From Styela clava (Eukaryota): DNA of 64,000 nt. Below, one piece after another: positions 33,502 to 47,773 of this stretch. The stretch lies in the NCBI RefSeq assembly GCF_964204865.1, contig NC_135257.1, forward strand, positions 14,136,001 to 14,200,000. Direction: 5' to 3'. The notes under the pieces were generated by a model. It was given only the letters and a program-made list of their open reading frames with translations. It was not told the origin of the DNA and did no database searches. Each line of letters opens with the position of its first letter. The first letter of the stretch is position 1. Both the position numbers and the translations under genes were made by a program.

Positions 33502-33984
33502 ATGTTGTGCCAAAACAGACTTTTTGTTATTTTTCGTACTAATGTATTTAATAATAAGTGCAAGAAAAAATTTTCATCACAGATAGTATCTGGAAAACCA
33601 TATGCTTCAGATGTTTTGACAGCGCATCTACGTCAAAGGAACTATCCACATTGGACCTCTTATTTTGTAAAGCAAAATAGTGTTAAGAATGATCAATTTG
33701 GAAAATCTCATTTCAATTGGTCAGTTGATTCAGTAAACTACCATGTCTTACGAACTGGATGCTGGCCATTTTTAAAATACCATTGTACAAAGCGTCCATA
33801 TGAAGATCTCCGGTGGGATAATTGTTTTTTCGGGTTTTTAAAAGTCATCAATTTTGGTATTCCCTGCTTTGCTTATGGAGTCGGCTCTTGGTTTCTAATC
33901 ACTTTTGAAGAAAAGGTTAAAACAAAATATGGCAATGTAACTGTTTATTTTTTATATAAAGAAGATAAAGATGCTAGATATTGA
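33502..33984 (+). CDS. C15orf61: C15orf61 (DUF4528) homolog, intronless
   Basis: [71 protein letters not shown] matches the family; splice-acceptor-like TTCTCACAG lies 2 nt before the ATG. Confidence 0.92.
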
Positions 33985-34074: not shown

Positions 34075-35376
34075 ATGGCTGAGTTTTCACGATGGAAAGC
34101 AGCTGCACTTGCTAAAGCAGATTTAAGCAGGAAAGGAAGCATAGATTCTGCAATTGAAAACGTTGTACATTTTATTAATGGGCAGTCTGGTTATTTCACC
34201 ACGAGCTCTTGCTCTGGAAGAATATTGCTATGTTCTGATGATGTGACTGGTGACAAAAAGAAGGATGAAAACAATGATGAACCTCGCACAAATAATACCA
34301 AGAAAGGTTGTCAATGGTATTTTGTATCCCATGAGATTGTAAACCCTGTGGATGTAATTGAACACTTAAAGAACATTCGAGGGCCGAGCAAACTAAAATT
34401 TGAACCATTTGTTATGCATGTGCAATGCAATAATATAGAAGCAGCCAGGTGTTTTCATCAAGCATCTGTAGCATCTGGATTTCGTAACTCTGGAATAAGC
34501 CTTGGAAAAGGAGGGAGAAAAATCATATCAGCTGTAAGAGGAACTGCTTGTTTGGAAGTGCCTCTAACGGATATTCAAGTGAGTTTATTATATTTAAGTT
34601 GAATACAAACTATGTATATTGGTCTGTATTTTGTTGAATATGCAACAATTTTGACAACAGTTAAACAATAAATCGAGATGCATTTTTTGCTTCTTGTTTT
34701 GGTCTTGTATGTGTTAGTTAAATTGTTGCTAATTGGCACAATCGGTATTTGGGAGGAGAAGGAGGATTTTTATTGATATGTATATTTTTCTAATTAGCTC
34801 GAACCATTTTGTAACTACTCATCAGGATACTGGTGATGATCAGTCCATTGTGAGCAGAGAAATTTGAATAGTGAGGTACATCTACCTTCAACAATAGCTA
34901 TTGAAATTGTTATTGATGTTGTACTTATGGTTCAAATATTTCTCATTTTGCCTAATACCTAAAGGAGTAAAGGGTCACTGATAAACCATTGACAATTGGT
35001 TATATTATAATCCCATGCTGTTGAGGTATGTGACATTAAGTCTCAATAATTTTTTGGTCATAATGACTAGAATCATTTTCATACTCTAATATTGGATATC
35101 TCTAATTGAAAATGTTGATTCAAGGAAACTAATCATTGGTTTGATTGCTTAATTTTATCTAGGTATTATATTTATATTTGAAAATATTACATATATAACA
35201 TGCTGTGCAGTCTTATGCACAAAAATCTATTCATTCGTTTAATATTTCAGGGAAACCGAATAACTGATGATAAATATGTTGACTATATCATAGAAACCGC
35301 AAATAGAAAACTCCACCGGAACTTCGAAATGATCAAAGTTTTTGAAAGTGAATTGAAAAAGACTCTTCCAAGTTAA
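34075..35376 (+). CDS. TYW3: tRNA wybutosine-synthesizing protein 3
   Basis: Exons 34075-34578 and 35251-35376. DLSRKGSIDS, YFTTSSCSGRI, LKFEPFVMHVQC, SGFRNSGI, AVRGTACLEVPL, ANRKLHRNFEMIKVF. Confidence 0.95.
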
Positions 35377-38125: not shown

Positions 38126-38371
38126 TTGTTTTGTGACTCAGGACGTAAAATTTTCAACGAAAAATGAGGACGAATCCTCCAAAAGGAGGACGTATGGTCA
38201 CCCTAACAAAACTGGGAATATGTTAAGATTCGCTGATCCAGACAGGTTCCGAATGAAGTGTTTTGCCTGTGACGTCATAATGCATATTTAAATTGAACTT
38301 AAAATTAAACTGACATTCAAATTCATTACTTTGTTCAGGAAGTCGTATCAAACGTCAAACCTTGATCAAAA

Positions 38372-41300
38372 ATGGGAGAAAATTCCGAAACAAGAGGAGA
38401 GAATAAACGAGGCGACAAGGTAAATTGTTACTTCGAATGGGATAGATGGCAAATAAGCGTTACACTCAATCACGTTAAAATAACCAGAGCTCAGGTTTTT
38501 ACTAAGTGTGAATATCTAGAAATTCAAAAATAAAAAAATTCCAAATTGTTTTTTGCGTTTTCCTCAAAACTCCAAATTGTGACTTAGGCCTGTTCTGTTC
38601 TCATCCGGCGATATTTGAATTTTTTGTGTTGAAACAATTTTATTCATAATTTTCAGACCTTTTTTATATTGCGCAAATTTCCATCAGATATACTCATCAA
38701 GCTGGTGTAAATACCGGATATACAACATACGTAAAATTAGCCTAATTAAATGGGAAATACATAAATTTAAACTACGTTAAATGCATCGAGTACGCAAATA
38801 TATTATATATATATTAATCCTCATTACAGAAATGGAAGCATTTCAAAAGCTTTGTGAAGATCTTCTTCTGTTTGACATGCATTTTTCCGAAAGTAAGTTC
38901 GTTTTTACGAGATATGAATACTATTGAACTTTATTGATTTATAAGCAAAGAAAACTACATTAAACATAGCTATGTTAATTGCTCTATAGTAACACTTATG
39001 TCCTCTAATGCAGGGCTTCCCAAACTATATTAAAATTTTTCCCGGCCCTTGTCCACGTTAAATAATGCCAAAGAGTTCGAATTATTCATTTTTGTTGTTT
39101 TATTGGCACAGCTAACTCTCAACTTTAACATGTCTACTCAATAACAAAAACAAGCACATATTTATTCAGATTAACGTTTCTCAATTATTCAGTGTAATAG
39201 GTACGAATGCTTTTTTCTGCATAGCAAGGCCCAATGTATGTTTGTTTATACAGGCCTAAATGATGAATTACGATGTCTGGCTACCGACGGCATGGTCCTT
39301 ATCTCCAATTGTTCACTCTTATTGATCAAACTTAGCATAAGGCAGCATTTTGTGCGACGCCAAATTATGAGGGAAAAAAACTCATGGCGCACCTACACGA
39401 AAAATATACTGCCTCAAAACAAAACACAATTTTGTCATCGTTAATATGTACTAAATGTCTTTTGAGGTTTTTAATCATGTAGGCCCGAGGAATAAAGGCA
39501 AAAAATTAACGTTTCTTTTTTTTTTTTATCTCTGCCTGTTTTTTCTTTAAAATGCTAAAGAACGGCAAAAGGACTTTGATTCATAACTAGGAATTTGTTT
39601 AAAAAGAATTGTTCTAAAACAAATGTTTTAAATCAAGTTTTGCCTGTTTTGTTCAAAATGGCTGTACTATTTGCTTTTTTGTATCAAATAGTTTGAAGTA
39701 AAATGAATGTAAAAACTTGCCAAGCGCTTCTTATATGCAATAAATCTTTCAAAACGCCACAAATATCGATAGAGGACCTGAAGCTGTAGTTCAGTGGTTG
39801 GCGCAGTAAGACGCAACCGATAAGCCCTTCACCTTCCAGGGCCGCGGTCCCTAGTTTGGGAAGCCCTGCTCTAATGAACTATATATTTTATTCATTCAGA
39901 AATCCAAAACAAGAAGACGTGGTGATGAATCAGTTGGTGAGAGAATTACTGCTAATATTTAGGAGGTTACATTGTCGTCAATCAATATCACAAAACTTGG
40001 AAATATTTATGTTGCCTTATATAAATATGAAAGTTTAATATTTTTATTTCATTTGTGTGTGTGTAATATGAAAGTATATGGCGATTTTGACAATTTAAGA
40101 TTTTTGCGCCATGCAATTTTTTCGTCATTACTTTTTTAATTTTATTCAATTACAGATTGCGCGATCTTGACTGGGGAACATTTCCGTGAAAACGTCGAAA
40201 ATGAGATCGCAAAATGTGAGTGTGAAGTATAAACAAATCGACGCATGAAATCCAAATTGGGCTAAGTCCATTTTTCTAGTTTTGAGAAAAACGCAAAAAA
40301 CGTTTTTTTTTTGTTCCTTTTTTTTATTTCTCTAATACCTTACATCGACGATGTCTAGTTTTTATGGTCTACCAAAGTTACAATGAAGGCCATATTTAGA
40401 TGGTATAAAAAAATTTGTGCTCTGCCCCAATTTTTTTTTGGGGGGGGGGGGGTTTGGACTTAACCCTTTTTGGCTCTAAATTTTCTGGACCAGAAACAAT
40501 TTTATTGGACTTAGGGCCCCTTTATTTGGTTATTATAGAGTCTGGTATGGACTTAGCGCTTGGTATTATATTTTTTTAGAGGAGCTATGTCCAAAAAACG
40601 GACTTAGCCCCAACTTACAATGCAGTTATCCAGAGATAAGTCCACTATAGTAGACACAGCTCATTTTAGTTCTCAAATGTTCTAAAAAAGGCAGGGTTAT
40701 GTCCATAGCTGTCTTGAGATCTAGAGCACCTAGAGATAAGGCAAATAGACCAAAATATAGAGCTAAGTCCAGGAAAATCAGCAATTGAAAAATGTCATTT
40801 TTTGGAAAAGTGGACTTAGCACTGTTTGGTTTTGAGGTGTCGAAATGTTTTGTAATAAGCGTAGTGATGGGGCTACGTACATAATGACAACCTAAAATAC
40901 CAGAATAGAATATTTCAAACAAGTGCCGTAAAGATGTTATGATAGACTAATTGTTTTAAAACCGGGACATTCCTATTTCAACGGTGATCTCAGATATGGT
41001 TGTCGGTTTTTGTTGTTAGTACGTGGAGTGAGTCGGGTAGGAATTAAAAACTCAATGTTCACGCCCAAGCTATAGCTGTATAGACTCAGAGATGACATAA
41101 ATGAATGAAGAAAAGTCATTTCGCACTAAAAGCTATTCTACTTTCCTTCAATTAAAATCAAAAGCGTTTATTTTATAACCAGGTACGTTGAAGACTGTTG
41201 TGGTGGATCCAAACATTGAGGATAAAAAATCAGTTCACAGCATAGGTAATGATAATACATTATAGGAAGTATATATATGTTATTATGTTTAATTCAGGCA

Positions 41301-43281
41301 CTTTTACACGTGGTAACCATAAAGGAATATGATACTTACGAAAAATGACATTAAAAAATATATTGCCCATATTTCCAATTTTGCTTATATTTAACTAAAA
41401 TATACAGTATTATAACAATTATTTCGAACTCGATTGTTCAAAAAAATATGTTTTTAACCTTCGCGATAACGGTCAGTAACAAAAATGCGAAAGACTTTCT
41501 AATAGAAAATAATGGATCCAAGTGCCTATAAATAATGAAACTGTGTTTACTGCATTTTAGAATCAGTTGCGAAGCCACCAGCAGGCCCAGTATCAAAAAT
41601 GCTCCAGGGAGGAGGTTTGATAATAACATTTTTACCGAAATAAAAAATAATCGTAAATCGGAAAACTTACGCAGTTCATATCAGTAGATTCTCATCCACC
41701 GATGTTAGTAAATTACGATTTTGTTAATTGGTCTTTGACTCCAATGCGCTCCATTTTGACAAGATTGTTACAAATTTTTCTGATGCATTCTAAAATTAAT
41801 TACAGGTGATTTTCTTGTGGACCTTGAAGCTCAGAATTTAGTACAAGCTGGTAAGTTTTTAAATTGATTTGCGCATTCTATTTTTCATTATATATATATA
41901 TTATATTGTAATGTTGGATGTTAGCTTCTCACTTGGCGACCCTGATCAAGATTTTGCAACGAAAGATATGTTGGCAACGCATAATCTGCGATATTCACAT
42001 AACAAAACATTAATGATCGAATAGGTAGATACGTAAGGTCTAATGATTAATAGGCCATCATAATGTTAGGAAAATACCATAGAAGTGTGATTTAGAACAC
42101 TGATCATATTAATCACTCTCTCTACGTCAGCAGAATTTAAAGGGTTGTACCGAATGCAACATTAAAATGTTCGGAATTATAAAAACCAGCACTAGTTGAG
42201 GTGAAACATCGAGCCGCGAATAAAAGGCTTAAAATAGCGACTTTTTCATTAGCCCAAAATCAATTTTGCAAAACGATTCTTAGGTCTATTTCCTGTTCAA
42301 TGATTTAGTGTGCCAGAAATTGGGACAATTATTTTTTTTTAAATTACTTTTGCATTCGTAGCTTTATACAAGGCCAAAGAAGATTTAATTCGGACCGCTG
42401 ATGGAGACGGAAAAGGTAAATATTTTAATACAATCAAAAACATCTGAAATGAATATATTTATTTTATAAGGTTAAATGATTTAAAATTGTCTTGCGTATG
42501 AAGTGACGAAAAGGTCAATTAATGCTTTTACTTTTTCTAGAAGTGTTATTACAACAAAAAGCTAAAGTCATTGTGGACGAAGGTGATTGTATTGCATGTT
42601 AGATATGATATTTCAGGATTCTAAGTATCACGTTTGAACAAATTTATTTTTGCCAAGGGCCGCATTCAGAATTTTTTTTTTTTGCAGAGGGTCAAATTTA
42701 GTGGATGAGACTGTTGAACTAAAGCTGAAAAAAAATTAATATTTTTGTAACAGTTCATATTTAAGATATTTTGAATAAAGTTTAAAAATAAATCGAAGAT
42801 GTGTAGTTGTGAGAAAGAACGTTCTCCTAAAGCATGAGCCACACAGAATACTTTAGCGTGCCACATGCGACCCGTCGGCCATATTTTCCCCATCTCCGAC
42901 CTAAATAGTAAGGTTAGCAGCCTTGGTAATTCTTCTCGAAACAATTGATTTGCCAACAGATCTATGGTACTAGAAGTTCAAACCCAATTTCAATTAATTA
43001 TTAGTAAATTTTTTTTTTTAACGGGAATGATTTTGCCTTAAGTAAGGCCTCACACTCACTGACATTTCTTTTTCTGCTCACAGCAATTTACGTGGCCATG
43101 AACATTCTCATGAAAGATCCTGTTGTGAAGCAGTCAGGTATGTTCACCTAAGATTTACATTAACTCAATGGATTTGATTTCAAAGATTTGACCGAGGTCA
43201 CCAATTTCCTATAAGTCCCTATCCTTATTGTATTAAAAAATAATCCCTTTATATTTTTCAGATATTGGAGATGGAAAATGA
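38372..43281 (+). CDS. Uncharacterised 161-aa protein with a Cys/polybasic membrane-targeting segment and two AKAP-like amphipathic helices
   Basis: Ten phase-consistent exons with GT-AG introns: 38372-38419, 38830-38892, 39900-39936, 40156-40215, 41183-41245, 41806-41850, 42362-42415, 42541-42582, 43084-43137, 43262-43281, giving one open frame. The first exon is the least certain. Confidence 0.7.
38476..38613 (-). mobile_element. Terminal fragment of the TIR family at 60189-60839
   Basis: Near-exact reverse complement of 60189-60323. Confidence 0.8.
39011..39868. mobile_element. hAT MITE in an intron
   Basis: TIR CAGGGCTTCCCAAACTA / TAGTTTGGGAAGCCCTG; perfect TSD CTCTAATG (39003-39010, 39869-39876). 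Confidence 0.93.
40238..40843. mobile_element. TCG..CGA TIR element with GGACTTAG subterminal repeats
   Basis: Imperfect TIR TCGAC.C...AAA.CCAAA...GCTAAGTCCA; GGACTTAG/CTAAGTCC motifs shared with 60189-60839. Confidence 0.6.
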
Positions 43282-44186
43282 ATGGGCGTATTTTATTATT
43301 TATTTGTTTTTTATTAATAAAATTCACAAAAAAATAAACTTTGGTATTATCTACGAATTGTACTTACCTGATGGGGAATCAAACATTACATTGTATAATA
43401 CAGTTAATACTTAAACTTAGGTATATCAGAGACTTTTTAACGGATGCAGTTCTGAGTTATGTTCGATTGTAGTACTTAATATCGATGATACATCTCAAAA
43501 TTTCCATCTTCCATTTCGAGTCATGGGAACATTTCTATGGGACCACTCTAACATCTTTTTAAGTAACAATAATTTCATATACACTATTATTCTATAATGA
43601 AAATAAAACATTTCTGTGTTTAGTCTATGGTTGGCCCAAAATGGTAGCTACACGTGGCGTGAAGAAAGTACCTCACAACTCGAGGTTGACAATAATTTCG
43701 CATATTCTTTTGAATAGACTAGGTATATATTTACGGACTGGGATATTCTTGTTTTTCGGTTGACGAAACAATAGATCATTCTCTCTTTTTGCTACGGGTT
43801 GAAAACTAAATATTCTATCATTCAATTAAGGCATAAATAGCTCTTTCATGAAATACTAGGAACGAACCTCAATTTATTCTTTTATAATAGTTTGTCATTT
43901 TCATTATTTTTTCTTCATGTAAACCCGTATGCGATTTTTATATCTGATAAACGCCTAATCCCACTTGAATATTTTGCGCGTTCATTTGTCTCTTACTTTT
44001 GCTTGGGATTAAATGATATTGTATAAGGGCAGAGTGGAATTTTTATATGAAGACAAGCGTGGTCGAAATAAACGTATAAAAAAATTCGACTCCGGCTTCA
44101 GGCTTTTCACAGTCAGAAATTCCGACTCCGACTCGACCCCCGGGAGTTCGTTATTTCTTAATTGTCGACCGTGGGGCTCTGGAACT

Positions 44187-46451
44187 ATGGCGCCTGGACT
44201 TGAAGGTGGGTTGCGTCGTGAATCGAGTCGTATTCAAGAAAGTAATTCTAGAAGAATCCTTGACAACGCTGCGCGAATTCGACGTTTGAATCGGCAGCTT
44301 GAGTCGTTGGAGAAAGATAATTACCAGGTGATTTAATTATCGCCAGACTGGTAGGTACCGGTGGCGGTTCCGTGTAAACTACTGCTGTACCGGTACCGGT
44401 ACTATACCGTACCGTACCGGTACTACCATAAGTTAGTTGTGATACGTCACTGAAGTAAATTCTAATTAAGTAATAGTAAATCATCTGGCTGATTGGTACC
44501 GGTACTGGTAATCAGACATATTTCTGTTATTTACAACTGTTTTGTCTTGTGTCATTGATCTGTGCCCCTCGATCTGTACCGGTACCGGTATATGACAAAA
44601 TGGGGTCTGGTACCGTAACTTAATTTAGTAGGGTACCACGTGCACTTTTAGTTGGCCTGGCTCAACAATTTTTGCTTATGTCATTCCTGACTACGTCACC
44701 GAAAAATTACGTCATTGCGACCTCACAGTGGTGTAATAAGCCACACCAAAGTATGCGGATGGTCGTCCAAAACGCGCAGACCATCATCCGAAATTGAGCA
44801 AGCTATTTCTCTCGTTGTTTAGTTGCAACAATCACGATATGAGAGAGATCGCCGACATTAGCGAGTTCGTTATCGGTCGCGCTGATGTCATTTCGGGCGT
44901 ACTTGTATTTTGACAAGCTTTATGACGTGATGGTGACGTCATAGCGACGTAATTTTTGGATGGCATAGTCAGGTGGAGGTTAGGAATAACATATGCAAAA
45001 TTCGTTATGCTACGCTCACTATACTTTACGCTAATATCACAATACTCTGAATACCAGTCTATCACACAAACCAACAGCGCAGTTTTTTGACTGTTTCCTT
45101 GTTTCAGGCGACTTTTTCGCTCTTGACGAGCATCTGAGCATAGAGAAACTGTTTTTATGGTTTCAGTAAGAATAGAATTTTCAAGTTCTGCGTTATCCAA
45201 TTTATTGCCCAAGTTGCACTTTCTTATCATGTCATTCACATATACAGGAGGATCCTCATACAAACTTGTCCAGTACGAAGAAAAAGGGTCCAAGATTTGG
45301 AATTGAATCTGATGAAGATAACGAAGATACAGAAGGACCAGTGAGTATATTTTTCAGTTTGTTGCAAGCAGAAAAGGATTTTTTTTACACTATGTTACTA
45401 TGAAGTACATTAAAGGCATGAATCTTTATTTGTGCCAATTGGTTTTTCTTCGAAAGCTCAAAGTTTATCACAAATCAAAAAGTTTAAAACTGAATCGAAC
45501 ATCGTAACATGTTGACTAATTTTTAGTTATACAATATTTTTTATAAAGATCATAATTCTCAAAATTAGTTAAGATTGTGAAATAGTTAATAAGTTGAGAT
45601 AGTTCATGATATTCTCTATTATGATGGGCTTTGGATACATGCATCAACAACTGTTCATGAATGTCAATAAGTATTAATTTTATCACAATAGTCCACGAAA
45701 CACTTTGGAAATGCAAAAGATTAAAATAAAGGGTTAAATGTAACGAGTACACAAGTTGCTATAGTATTGATGACAGCTTCAACTACAAGAAAAAATTTTG
45801 TTTAAATATTTCAGGCAGTCAAAAAGAAAAAGAAGACTCGAGGTGATTTTTATAAACAAAGATTCAGAAAAAATATATCCGCTTTGCTTGATGAAGAGCG
45901 CATTCGTCTGCAGGACAAGGACAAAACGAGACCAAACTATTTTGGTGCAGTAGCACCACTTTCTAAGTAAGAGTAATATTATGAGAGATTCTTTAGTCTT
46001 CGATCCCATTGTTAAATACCAGAATTTTGTTGATAGGATTTGCTCAAAAAGGCCTCACATAAACATCTTATAACAGTGTTAAAAATATTCAACAATGCTT
46101 TTTGTGAAAAATAGGTCAATTACTGGATGGTCAAATACAATTAGTGCCAATTCTCACATAACCTGTTTGTTACCTTTGTGTAAAGGAATATCATCAACAT
46201 TATAGTGATGTGATGTACGGTGTATCTAAAGTGACATAATAACGAATATTTTGGCAATTGAGTGTATGACAAGATTCTTTCGTTCTGTCAATTAATGCAA
46301 TCAATAAAATCCCAGGTTTCCTCAAAGACACTTTTGTGCAGTTTGTGGATCTTTGTCCAACTATACATGTGTGTCTTGTGGTGCAAGATATTGTTGTGTA
46401 AAGTGTCTTGGAACCCATAGAGATACACGTTGTTTGAAGTGGACTGTGTAA
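44187..46451 (+). CDS. ZNHIT1: Zinc finger HIT domain-containing protein 1 (SRCAP/SWR1 subunit, Vps71)
   Basis: Exons 44187-44327, 45248-45340, 45815-45966, 46316-46451. RRILDNAARIRRLNRQLESLEKDNYQEDPH, KKKKTRGDFYKQRFRKN, FCAVCG..YTCVSCGARYCCVKCLGTHRDTRCLKWTV*. Confidence 0.96.
44630..45050. mobile_element. Degenerate long-TIR MITE in ZNHIT1 intron 1
   Basis: TTTTGCTTATGTCATTCCTGACTAC..AAAAATTACGTC is inversely repeated as GACGTAATTTTTGG..TAGTCAGG..GGAATAACATATGCAAAA. Confidence 0.5.
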
Positions 46452-46462
46452 TCAAAAGCATA

Positions 46463-47773
46463 ATGGCACAAAGTATCATTGATCAATTGCAAGAGAAAAA
46501 CAACCAACTAGAAGAAGAAATAAAAACTTGCAGAGATTTGTTTAATAATCTAAATGAAGAGAAGGATCTAGAAAGCCATGATAATCGTAGAGCATTCATG
46601 CTGAAGGCTCAGATCTACCAGCTTGAGAGACAATGTATGCTTCTTTCACAAGCACAGTCAAGTCGTGCACAAGTATTAACTGAAATAGAAAGTCAGTTGA
46701 AGAAGATTACAGACATTTTACAACATGCAATATCTGGGAAAACTTCTGGACCAACTGTGCCTATGGATCGTCGGGAACTTATGGATTTAGTGGGAACATT
46801 ACAGAAGCTGAAAAATTCCTTGTATAAACAATCTTCTTTAGAAAGTGCTGATAGTCTTCGAATACAATCTATGATGTCGGGTAGTAAATACGCAAATTCA
46901 CAAAAGCCTGTTGACTGCTATGATGTATGTACAGGACACATAGGACATATTAATTTGAAACAAGTTGCCCATCTTGAACAAGATCTATCAGCACTGTATG
47001 GCCGGCTCTGTGGCTTGAAATATTTTTTGCATTCATCAATCGTTGATGGAAAAGCTGACAAACGAGAAGTTTTAACAAATGCTCCTTCTGCAAAATTAAC
47101 TAAGCCTGTTGTATCCAAAATACATGAAGAAACTAATCAATGTATTGAGGATTTAGCACATTGCTGCAGTGAGCTGGTATCTCTATCACTGTTGTATCCT
47201 AATGCACCTTGGCCTGTGATAAAAAGATCCAAACAGACTGAAATGACACCTGAAAAAATTATGCAAACATTTCCACCAGTTGCACAAAAAAATCGTCAGA
47301 TTCAGTCTTCAGTTAGTTCTGTCTGCAAAATGCATAATTACTTGAATCATATGAATGATTTAAAACTAAATGCAGCAGAACTACAAATTTCTTTTCACAA
47401 AGCGATTTACAAAATACAGCTGGATTATTTAAATGATCTGAGTGAATGCATTATTGAAGCATTTCATAACTCTGAAAGAAACATGTTAAAAACTGTGTGT
47501 GATCCAGTTGCTGCTATCTTGAATTCATGGTATTTATTGAAGCAAGATCAAAGTGGCGATCATCTTAAGAAATTTTTAAGTGATATGAAGCAATATGAAG
47601 GCCAGCTTAAGGCTGTTTCTGAGCTCAAAGTTACTGAAAAAAAATTAACCACTGGAGGAAGTGCTCTTTTGAACAATTTCAAAGAAGCCTTAAATTCAGC
47701 TCTCAAAAAAGTTGAAACTGAATATAAACATAAATTTGCAGATGCAGAAAGACATATTGAACATTATAAATAA
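46463..47773 (+). CDS. Uncharacterised intronless 436-aa coiled-coil protein
   Basis: 1311-nt ORF in AT-rich DNA, first ATG at 46463; heptad-rich N- and C-terminal segments; motif RRAFMLKAQIYQLERQC. Confidence 0.85.
   Translation: MAQSIIDQLQEKNNQLEEEIKTCRDLFNNLNEEKDLESHDNRRAFMLKAQIYQLERQCMLLSQAQSSRAQVLTEIESQLKKITDILQHAISGKTSGPTVPMDRRELMDLVGTLQKLKNSLYKQSSLESADSLRIQSMMSGSKYANSQKPVDCYDVCTGHIGHINLKQVAHLEQDLSALYGRLCGLKYFLHSSIVDGKADKREVLTNAPSAKLTKPVVSKIHEETNQCIEDLAHCCSELVSLSLLYPNAPWPVIKRSKQTEMTPEKIMQTFPPVAQKNRQIQSSVSSVCKMHNYLNHMNDLKLNAAELQISFHKAIYKIQLDYLNDLSECIIEAFHNSERNMLKTVCDPVAAILNSWYLLKQDQSGDHLKKFLSDMKQYEGQLKAVSELKVTEKKLTTGGSALLNNFKEALNSALKKVETEYKHKFADAERHIEHYK

What the first reader, a model, noticed from the sequence alone, without database searches (positions are those of the whole stretch)
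38372..43281. Hidden 10-microexon gene: candidate membrane-anchored AKAP with two tandem PKA-binding helices
Seen: exons of 20-63 nt, invisible to the ORF track, splice into MGENSETRGENKRGDKKWKHFKSFVKIFFCLTCIFPKKSKTRRRGDESVDCAILTGEHFRENVENEIAKCTLKTVVVDPNIEDKKSVHSIGDFLVDLEAQNLVQAALYKAKEDLIRTADGDGKEVLLQQKAKVIVDEAIYVAMNILMKDPVVKQSDIGDGK. Known: AKAP helices follow (L/I)xxxAxx(I/L)Vxx(A/V)(I/L)xxA; both VDLEAQNLVQAALYKA and LQQKAKVIVDEAIYVA fit. The FFCLTCIF segment flanked by basic residues resembles palmitoyl/polybasic anchors of small AKAPs. Inference: an undescribed compact scaffold tethering two PKA (or other D/D-domain) dimers to membranes.
Basis: partly seen in the sequence, partly recalled or inferred. 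Interest (0 to 1): 0.75.

Follow-up and report, generated by a model that had tools for sequence, protein, structure and literature searches.

The report
Expressed mini-exon gene family, AKAP-like helices
This is a real, spliced and expressed small animal gene, one of at least seven intact copies in its genome, whose protein carries two helices that fit the published docking motif for protein kinase A, though actual binding is untested.

Summary
The gene is real. Contigs of three RNA-like runs carry the exon joints; a DNA-like run does not.

Three corrections:
The product is about 179 aa, not 161.
- The exon 9 to exon 10 joint is not among the rows shown.
- The gene is not unique. The genome holds six more intact copies and one partial copy in a 5-kb tandem array on contig C3, plus a degenerate copy on C18.

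Window versus array copies give dN/dS 0.24-0.30 overall and 0.10-0.17 over the helix exons.

Read across the exon 8/9 junction, helix 2 fits the published RII-docking consensus LxxxAxxIVxxAIxxA at 7 of 7 specified positions. Helix 1 fits at 4 exact plus 3 conservative (consensus). The same phase-1 intron splits both helices at the same motif Ala.

The basic/hydrophobic two-Cys segment is kept in 7 of 7 copies. Gly2 is present in only 1 of 7.

Exon-by-exon Pfam and PDB searches found nothing. The joined-protein search was left out by rule. My verdict is a plausible new AKAP-type scaffold with binding unproven.

The parts
38200..38371 (+). Proximal promoter and 5' UTR block conserved with the C3 paralogues. 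It contains TGACGTCA at 38270-38277 followed by an AT-rich TATA-like stretch, and an in-frame TGA 9 nt before the ATG.
   Evidence: Alignment of 330 nt upstream of the ATG in 7 copies: only about the last 170 nt align well. TGACGTCA is kept in 6 of 7 copies (c5 has TGAAGTCA). The octamer occurs 7 times in the window against 0.66 expected, so it is not specific to this gene.
38372..38419 (+). Exon 1, coding part (48 nt; MGENSETRGENKRGDK).
   Evidence: Joint to exon 2 in X1 and X2. The paralogues start MDNNSE..., so Gly2 is present in 1 of 7 copies.
38830..38892 (+). Exon 2 (63 nt, phase 0-0): basic amphipathic stretch followed by a hydrophobic two-Cys stretch (KWKHFKSFVKIFFCLTCIFPK). Proposed membrane-binding and S-acylation segment.
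   Evidence: FVKIFFCL[T/A]CIFP with both Cys kept in 7 of 7 copies. Best 11-residue hydrophobic moment is 0.68, reached by 90 of 2000 shuffles. No Pfam or PDB hit.
39900..39936 (+). Exon 3 (37 nt, phase 0-1): polybasic KSKTRRRGDESV.
   Evidence: Present as letters between the 38892>40155 joint in X1 and X2. Peptide identical in 7 of 7 copies despite 3 synonymous differences.
40156..40215 (+). Exon 4 (60 nt, phase 1-1).
   Evidence: Joint 40215>41183 in X1, X2 and X4.
41183..41245 (+). Exon 5 (63 nt, phase 1-1).
41561..41614 (+). A Pro/Gly-rich linker (SVAKPPAGPVSKMLQGG between two split codons) placed before helix 1.
   Evidence: Joints 41245>41561 and 41614>41806 in X1, X2 and X4, absent from X10. 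ag/gt sites and 97-100% identity in 6 of 6 full paralogues.
41806..41850 (+). Exon 6 (45 nt, phase 1-1): first part of helix 1. Motif positions start at 41817.
   Evidence: Peptide identical in 7 of 7 copies with one synonymous change. Joint to exon 7 in X1 and X4.
42362..42415 (+). Exon 7 (54 nt, phase 1-1): end of helix 1 (motif ends at 42375), then the DGDGK loop.
42541..42582 (+). Exon 8 (42 nt, phase 1-1): first part of helix 2. Motif from 42549, supplying L, A and IV of the consensus.
   Evidence: AKVIVDE kept in 8 of 8 copies that have the exon. Seen in X1 as letters between the 42415>43082 joint, in the C3-type version.
43084..43137 (+). Exon 9 (54 nt, phase 1-1): end of helix 2. Motif ends at 43097; the helix runs on to the Asp-Pro.
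   Evidence: IYVAMNILMKDP kept in 8 of 8 copies.
43262..43281 (+). Exon 10, coding part (IGDGK plus stop).
   Evidence: The stop is kept in 8 of 8 copies and the acceptor ag in 7 of 8. No RNA joint for this junction is among the rows shown.
43316..43321 (+). AATAAA polyadenylation signal, 35 nt after the stop.
   Evidence: Sequence. Conserved in the downstream alignment of 8 copies.

Best explanation
The locus is one copy (contig C9) of a recently amplified family of small genes. Each is built from 11 very short coding exons and encodes a soluble-looking protein of about 179 aa.

My reading is that the protein is a peripheral-membrane scaffold of the AKAP type, working in three steps:
1. Inferred: the basic amphipathic stretch, the conserved hydrophobic two-Cys stretch and the polybasic run of exons 2-3 hold it on the cytoplasmic face of a membrane, probably with S-acylation of the two Cys.
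2. Partly shown at sequence level only: two helices, free of Pro and Gly, are separated by a Gly/Asp loop. Each presents the aliphatic face that fits the groove of an RIIa-type docking/dimerization (D/D) dimer. The partner would be PKA RII first, or the SPA17/ropporin-type D/D proteins that the same genome encodes. One molecule could therefore hold two dimers.
3. Inferred: 8 of 9 internal exons are multiples of three, all in phase 1-1 from exon 4 onward. Exon skipping could therefore give in-frame isoforms with one or two helices, or without the linker.
For: Gene reality:
- Intron-precise joints appear in three RNA-like runs and none in the DNA-like run.
- 6 further intact copies keep every exon open, with ag/gt sites.
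- dN/dS is 0.24-0.30 overall and 0.10-0.17 for exons 6-10.
- The proximal promoter and AATAAA are conserved.

Docking motif:
- The consensus LxxxAxxIVxxAIxxA comes from PMC3682517. Exon 8 supplies L, A and IV, the split codon supplies A, and exon 9 supplies I and A, giving 7 of 7. The same holds in the C3 copies and in the C18 copy.
- Helix 1 has A, V, A, A exact, and V, L, L in place of L, I, I.
- Of the hydrophobic positions 2, 5, 6, 9, 10, 13, 14, 17 given in PMC12083921 section 5, 7 of 8 are filled in both helices. Helix 2 fills 8 of 8 in a register shifted by four.
- The 6-position core AxxIVxxAIxxA, contiguous in any frame, occurs only 9 times in the 377-Mb genome, against 4 for the reversed control. 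An exact fit inside a verified coding frame is therefore not expected by chance; my rough estimate from typical residue frequencies is 1e-8 to 1e-7 per position.
- Both helices are cut by a phase-1 intron in the codon of the same motif Ala, which points to duplication of a two-exon helix unit.

Partners and precedent:
- Partners exist. There are at least 4 RIIa-domain loci: RII-like, RI-like and two SPA17/ropporin-like.
- Dual-helix anchoring proteins are known: SKIP and AKAP220 and RSP3 (listing abstract).
- AKAP79 uses polybasic regions plus two palmitoylated Cys (listing abstract).
Against: - There is no binding data and no structure prediction.
- No homology to any AKAP family was detected: Pfam exon by exon gave 0 hits for 9 of 9 pieces at E up to 10. 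PDB phmmer gave 0 hits for exons 2, 6, 8 and 9. These pieces are only 20-21 aa. Pfam also missed a contiguous AKAP-like helix in a 198-aa frame elsewhere in the genome, so the blanks weigh little.
- Per-exon hydrophobic moments of the helix exons are not above shuffles: e6 994, e7 280, e8 677, e9 1306 of 2000 shuffles reach the observed value.
- Three of the nine free positions of helix 2 are hydrophobic (V, Y, V). The helix may be buried, or may pack against helix 1.
- A tandem array of near-identical copies is not typical of AKAP genes.
- Gly2 is not conserved.
- Kinship outside this genome is unknown, because the joined product was not searched.
- The RNA status of the runs is the tool's guess.
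Confidence: 0.45

Rival explanations
1. The two helices do not dock D/D domains. They pack on each other as a helical hairpin, or between molecules as a four-helix bundle or coiled coil. The protein would then be a self-associating, membrane-proximal structural or adaptor protein with other partners, and the consensus fit would be a by-product of an Ala/Ile/Val/Leu-rich helix.
For: Helix 2 is hydrophobic on more than one face. Per-exon hydrophobic moments are not above shuffles. The general hydrophobic pattern (7 of 8 positions) is weak evidence on its own; by my estimate it would arise once or twice by chance in a protein of this size. No AKAP family signal was found. High copy number suits an abundant structural protein.
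Against: The exact 7 of 7 fit involves specific residues (Ala, Ile-Val, Ala-Ile, Ala), not just hydrophobicity. It is kept in all copies, including the degenerate C18 copy. The core is rare genome-wide.
Confidence: 0.3
2. The helices dock only non-kinase D/D proteins (SPA17/ropporin type) as an architectural element, for instance in cilia or flagella. No PKA anchoring is involved.
For: The genome encodes two SPA17/ropporin-like RIIa domains with the best RIIa scores. Non-kinase D/D proteins bind AKAP helices and organise cilia (PMC8339350 passages). RSP3 uses two helices in this way (listing abstract). An abundant structural role would fit gene amplification.
Against: A lipid/polybasic membrane segment is not expected of an axonemal protein. 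The fit is to the RII consensus. No tissue information is available.
Confidence: 0.15
3. The family encodes precursors of secreted, cationic, amphipathic peptides (antimicrobial or toxin-like), as tandem arrays of mini-exon genes often do. The KWK.FK start of exon 2 recalls cecropin-type peptides (a recalled resemblance).
For: Tandem array. Very short symmetric exons as in schistosome micro-exon genes (PMC4350168 passages). Exon 2 is the most amphipathic piece.
Against: There is no signal peptide: 16 hydrophilic, charged residues precede exon 2, and the hydrophobic run is only 9-12 residues. By hand, the Kyte-Doolittle 19-residue mean is about 0.7, below the usual 1.6 (scale and threshold recalled). 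dN/dS is low, unlike micro-exon genes.
Confidence: 0.04

Closest known systems
AKAP79/150 (AKAP5)
   Same: N-terminal polybasic regions with two reversibly palmitoylated Cys for membrane attachment (PMC9521714, abstract as listed), plus a C-terminal RII-docking amphipathic helix.
   Different: AKAP79 is far larger, has one helix and has further enzyme-binding sites. It is reported as a tetrapod innovation (PMC12083921 section 4). No sequence kinship was detected here, although only exon pieces were tested.
Small lipid-anchored AKAPs (smAKAP, AKAP18 alpha)
   Same: Short proteins made of a membrane anchor plus a docking helix. smAKAP is called membrane-tethered in PMC12083921. The details of their N-terminal acyl anchors are recalled, not seen.
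   Different: Those use an N-terminal Gly/Cys acylation signal; here Gly2 is present in 1 of 7 copies. smAKAP is RI-selective through an F/Y-A motif at helix positions 1-2, which neither helix here has. This protein has two helices.
Dual-helix anchoring proteins: SKIP, AKAP220, RSP3
   Same: Two docking helices in one polypeptide, able to hold two D/D dimers (discussion passage; listing abstract for RSP3).
   Different: Those are large multi-domain proteins. SKIP and AKAP220 are placed at or after the base of vertebrates. Here the two helices are adjacent copies of one two-exon unit in a 179-aa protein.
Schistosome micro-exon genes (MEGs)
   Same: Most of the coding region lies in very small symmetrical exons, which permits in-frame exon skipping, and the genes form families (PMC4350168 passages).
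   Different: MEG products all have signal peptides, show high dN/dS and appear restricted to flatworms. This family has no signal peptide and dN/dS of 0.24-0.30. Its exons (37-63 nt) are larger than typical MEG exons (typical size recalled).

Membership tests
AKAP (functional class) | A 14-18-residue amphipathic helix with aliphatic side chains at positions 2, 5, 6, 9, 10, 13, 14, 17 (PMC12083921 section 5). | tested here: met
   Read by eye from the per-exon translations. Helix 1 fills 7 of 8 positions. Helix 2 fills 7 of 8, or 8 of 8 in a register shifted by four. There is no Pro or Gly within either helix. The per-exon hydrophobic moment is not above shuffles, so amphipathicity itself is only moderately supported.
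AKAP (functional class) | Fit to the RII-docking consensus LxxxAxxIVxxAIxxA (PMC3682517). | tested here: met
   Helix 2 fits 7 of 7 specified positions in the window copy, the C3 copies and the C18 copy. Helix 1 fits 4 exactly plus 3 conservatively.
AKAP (functional class) | High-affinity binding to the D/D domain of a PKA regulatory subunit. | not testable with these tools
   This needs overlay, pull-down or a complex prediction with the joined product. Only the presence of partners was shown.
AKAP (functional class) | A targeting element that fixes the complex at a subcellular site. | tested here: inconclusive
   The basic amphipathic, two-Cys and polybasic segment is conserved in 7 of 7 copies. 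Acylation and localisation are untested.
Type I (RI-selective) AKAPs | F/Y at position 1 and Ala at position 2 of the helix (the FA motif). | tested here: not met
   In the registers above, positions 1-2 are L-V or E-A for helix 1 and L-L or K-A for helix 2.
Pfam AKAP-related families (RII-binding, AKAP7, smAKAP, WSK motif) | A match to the family profile. | tested here: inconclusive
   0 families matched for 9 of 9 exon pieces at E up to 10. The pieces are 20-21 aa and both helices are split by introns. The whole product was not scanned. The family names are recalled.
Schistosome-type micro-exon genes | Coding region mostly made of very small symmetrical exons. | tested here: met
   8 of 9 internal exons are multiples of 3 (63, 60, 63, 54, 45, 54, 42, 54 nt; the exception is 37 nt).
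Schistosome-type micro-exon genes | Signal peptide, with a secreted or surface product. | tested here: not met
   The N-terminus is charged and hydrophilic, and the hydrophobic run is only 9-12 residues (hand calculation). No predictor was available.
Schistosome-type micro-exon genes | Accelerated protein evolution (high dN/dS). | tested here: not met
   dN/dS is 0.24-0.30 between the window copy and the C3 copies.

The most novel reading that the evidence does not exclude
An animal lineage outside the vertebrates independently built a compact, lipid-anchored, dual-helix A-kinase anchor by duplicating a two-exon helix unit, and then amplified the gene into a tandem array. Its symmetric mini-exons would let splicing choose how many D/D dimers each molecule tethers. 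Small membrane-tethered and dual-helix AKAPs would then not be vertebrate inventions, as current surveys state.
Probability: 0.25. Interest if true: 0.7.

Novelty: new member of a known kind. Interest (0 to 1): 0.5.

Why it matters
AKAPs are defined by a short helix rather than by common descent, so new ones are hard to find by homology. A recent survey places small membrane-tethered and dual-helix AKAPs at or after the origin of vertebrates (PMC12083921).

This protein is 179 aa, expressed and selectively constrained. One of its helices fits the RII consensus exactly, a second related helix sits beside it, and it has a conserved acylation-type segment. That makes it a directly testable candidate for convergent invention of such a scaffold. 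The neighbouring genes are animal-type; that the organism is not a vertebrate is my inference from genome size and composition.

The gene structure is also unusual in its own right. All internal exons are 63 nt or shorter, nearly all are symmetric, and the gene sits in a 5-kb tandem array. It is a clear case of a gene that ORF-based tracks miss.

Tried and rejected
- **Pfam, exon by exon.** Nine pieces were scanned, each an unbroken window stretch of 20-21 codons that in some cases runs a few codons into the intron to reach the tool's minimum length. There were 0 hits.
- **PDB sequence search.** Exons 8, 6, 2 and 9 gave 0 hits at E up to 10.
- **WSK-motif idea for exon 2** (recalled resemblance to AKAP5/AKAP12 polybasic motifs). 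It has no Pfam support and I kept it only as a loose analogy.
- **Cecropin-like peptide idea.** Rejected for lack of a signal peptide.
- **EF-hand idea for the DGDGK loop.** By eye it fails the recalled loop consensus at positions 5, 6 and 12.
- **N-myristoylation.** Rejected as a family trait, because Gly2 is present in 1 of 7 copies.
- **Transmembrane helix or signal anchor in exon 2.** The hand-computed 19-residue hydropathy mean is about 0.7, so this was rejected.
- **cAMP-response element as a specific link to cAMP signalling.** The octamer is conserved in 6 of 7 promoters. It also occurs 7 times in the window against 0.66 expected, so it looks like a common promoter element here.
- **Hydrophobic moment per exon.** It gave no support for the helix exons.
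- **Positive control for the motif.** Two of the 9 genome-wide core matches lie in open frames with AKAP-like context. Pfam names neither as an AKAP.
- **Bacterial-type promoter/terminator scan** and **tRNA scan**. Neither is relevant to this gene.
- **Earlier notes of the scan.** Nothing on this gene.
- **Literature.** Searches for 'A-kinase anchoring' with 'microexon', and for AKAP with invertebrate, tandem array and amphipathic helix, listed no paper describing such a gene. These two searches are my only basis for 'not found in print', and the organism's name is unknown to me.
- **Supplementary files.** The supplements of PMC12083921 (Figs S1, S2: AKAP lists per clade) were not seen and may bear on the claim about invertebrates.

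Full report
**What is in the sequence.** The window is AT-rich (about 34% G+C) animal-type DNA. Its neighbouring open frames are a DUF4528 (C15orf61-type) protein and TYW3. One search used coordinates one base off and was corrected. The lengths are 48, 63, 37, 60, 63, 45, 54, 42, 54 and 20 nt. All nine introns begin GT and end AG, behind pyrimidine-rich tracts.

**Expression and splicing.**
- Thirteen public runs hold words of the stretch. Nine runs from three studies hold 7-13% of the words, which is about the exon share; the tool guesses these to be RNA. Four runs from a fourth study hold 50-57%.
- I laid one RNA-like run from each of the three studies (X1, X2, X4) and one DNA-like run (X10) on 38200-43500.
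- Intron-precise joints appear for e1-e2 (X1, X2), e4-e5 (X1, X2, X4) and e6-e7 (X1, X4).
- Exon 3 and exon 8 were too short to be laid. They appear as the 'letters between' the joints 38892>40155 (X1, X2) and 42415>43082 (X1).
- None of these joints is in X10, and no genomic copy lacks introns. The joints therefore come from spliced RNA.
- In all three RNA-like runs, exon 5 joins 41561 and 41614 joins 41806. It is in frame, phase 1-1. It turns the junction codon from Gly to Glu and adds a Pro/Gly-rich linker.
- The coding sequence of the observed transcripts is then 540 nt, about 179 aa.
- A direct e5-e6 joint and the e9-e10 joint are not among the rows shown; three rows were not shown.

**A gene family, not a lone gene.**
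- A DNA search of the window's own genome (377 Mb; the window is on contig C9) found seven collinear matches on contig C3 at a spacing of about 5 kb, and one weaker match on C18.
- After fetching the region, exon-by-exon BLAST and alignment showed six complete copies (c1-c6) with all eleven exons, open frames and ag/gt sites. One partial copy (c0) holds exons 7-10.
- Exon 5b is 97-100% identical in six of six full copies.
- The C18 copy is collinear from exon 3 to beyond the stop. It lacks recognisable exons 1, 2, 5b and 6, and has an in-frame stop in exon 4 if spliced as in the window. It is probably decaying.
- By eye, the exon 8 letters in run X1 differ at 2 of 40 places from the C3 copies and at 8 of 40 from the window. 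The contig over exons 2 and 4 differs from the window at 2 of 65 and 1 of 61 places, against 5 of 63 and 5 of 60 for the C3 copies. Both the window-type and the array-type genes therefore seem to be transcribed. Contigs cannot prove this.

**Constraint.**
- Nei-Gojobori counts, summed codon by codon over complete codons, give dS of about 0.18-0.20 and dN/dS of 0.24-0.30 between the window copy and each C3 copy.
- By region, dN/dS is 0.10-0.17 for exons 6-10, 0.17-0.27 for exons 3-5b and 0.72-0.81 for exons 1-2.
- The six comparisons are not independent, because the array copies are nearly identical to each other.
- Overall DNA identity including introns is 78-84%, against 88-100% for exons with 15-nt flanks on each side.
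- About 170 nt before the ATG, and the AATAAA 35 nt after the stop, are conserved.
- Exon 6 is identical as peptide in 7 of 7 copies. AKVIVDE of exon 8 and IYVAMNILMKDP of exon 9 are kept in 8 of 8. The FVKIFFCL[T/A]CIFP stretch, with both Cys, is kept in 7 of 7. Gly2 is present only in the window copy.

**The helices.**
- A paper gives the RII-docking consensus as LxxxAxxIVxxAIxxA (PMC3682517, introduction passage). Another gives the aliphatic positions of the 18-residue helix as 2, 5, 6, 9, 10, 13, 14 and 17 (PMC12083921, section 5 read in full).
- I read across the exon 8/9 junction by eye. Exon 8 gives L, three free residues, A, two free, then I-V and two free. The split codon gives A. Exon 9 gives I, two free, then A. 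All seven specified positions fit.
- The same is true of the C3 copies and even of the C18 copy.
- Helix 1 (exons 6/7) has the four residues A, V, A, A exactly, and V, L, L in place of L, I, I.
- In both helices a phase-1 intron cuts the codon of the same motif alanine. Exon 7 ends, and exon 10 consists of, a D-G-D-G-K-like tail. The two helices therefore look like copies of one two-exon unit.
- The six-position core, contiguous in any frame, occurs 9 times in the whole genome against 4 for the reversed control. The exact fit in a verified reading frame is therefore unlikely to be chance.
- The looser hydrophobic pattern alone would not be significant.
- Neither helix has the F/Y-A start of RI-selective anchors.

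**Evidence that weakens the reading.**
- Per-exon hydrophobic moments of exons 6-9 do not exceed shuffles.
- Helix 2 carries V, Y and V at free positions.
- Pfam and PDB searches of the exon pieces were blank. These pieces are short and the helices are split. Pfam also failed to name a contiguous AKAP-like helix elsewhere in this genome.
- The promoter's TGACGTCA is common in this window, 7 against 0.66 expected, so it says nothing specific about cAMP.
- The joined product was not searched, folded or docked. Kinship outside this genome, and hence 'undescribed', remains open.

**Partners and comparison.** The genome encodes at least four RIIa-type domains. By eye, these are one RII-like, one RI-like and two SPA17/ropporin-like. 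Non-kinase D/D proteins also bind AKAP helices (PMC8339350 passages). The closest known systems are:
- AKAP79, with polybasic regions, two palmitoylated Cys and one helix (abstract as listed);
- the small tethered AKAPs;
- the dual-helix anchors SKIP, AKAP220 and RSP3;
- for gene structure, the schistosome micro-exon genes. Their signal peptide and fast evolution are not found here.

**Verdict.** The AKAP-type interpretation is the best available reading (about 0.45). It rests on an exact, conserved motif fit and a conserved acylation-type segment, not on any binding or homology evidence. The main rival is self-association or some other partner (about 0.3). I class it as a likely new member of a known, functionally defined kind, with an unusual gene architecture.

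Noticed in passing
G000:C3:5306946-5338018 (loci L002-L008, L009-L016): A tandem array with a period of about 5 kb. It holds six intact copies and one partial copy of the gene, 78-84% identical to the window copy including introns.
   Followed up: yes
G000:C18:16573233-16575954, minus strand (L012): A degenerate family member. Exons 3, 5, 7, 8, 9 and 10 are recognisable. Exon 4 has an in-frame stop if spliced as in the window. Exons 1, 2, 5b and 6 were not found. The donors of exons 7 and 9 are shifted. The helix 2 core still fits the consensus.
   Followed up: partly
window 2462, 2635, 8037, 8477, 26317, 38270, 44934: The palindrome TGACGTCA occurs 7 times against 0.66 expected from shuffles, and 0 of 100 shuffles reach 7. 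It may be a common promoter element or part of a repeat in this genome.
   Followed up: no
window 38471-38612 and 40237-40843: High-copy repeat sequence in introns 1 and 4. Summed contig depth in the DNA-like run is tens of thousands, against a few hundred elsewhere. The two stretches include 95-nt arms that are 71% complementary to each other (38518-38612 and 40237-40331).
   Followed up: no
window 39085-39969: Intron 2 also carries very high-depth repeat sequence. By eye it includes a tRNA-like stretch near 39775-39870, but ARAGORN calls no tRNA anywhere in the window.
   Followed up: no
window 44686-44739 / 44920-44973: 54-nt inverted repeat arms, 72% complementary and rich in ACGTCA-type words, 180 nt apart. 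The second arm lies inside a 153-aa frame on the minus strand that has no Pfam match.
   Followed up: no
window 33502-33984 and 34075-34602: Two intron-less open frames 90 nt apart: DUF4528 (C15orf61-type, E 1.8e-62) and TYW3 (E 1.1e-39). Only the identities were checked.
   Followed up: partly
window 46430-47773: A 447-aa single-exon frame, coiled-coil-like by eye, with only a weak sub-threshold Exo70_N match (E 0.0055).
   Followed up: no
G000:C2:9529833-9529867, minus strand (L022); G000:C8:6363735-6363769 (L023): Two contiguous matches to the AxxIVxxAIxxA core lie in open frames of 198 and 96 aa. The second lies just after a weak IQ motif. Both are possible further anchoring helices of this genome, and Pfam names neither.
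   Followed up: partly
L018 (C4), L019 (C1), L020 (C8), L021 (C18): Four RIIa-domain loci in the genome. By eye, two are SPA17/ropporin-like, one is PKA RII-like and one is RI-like.
   Followed up: partly
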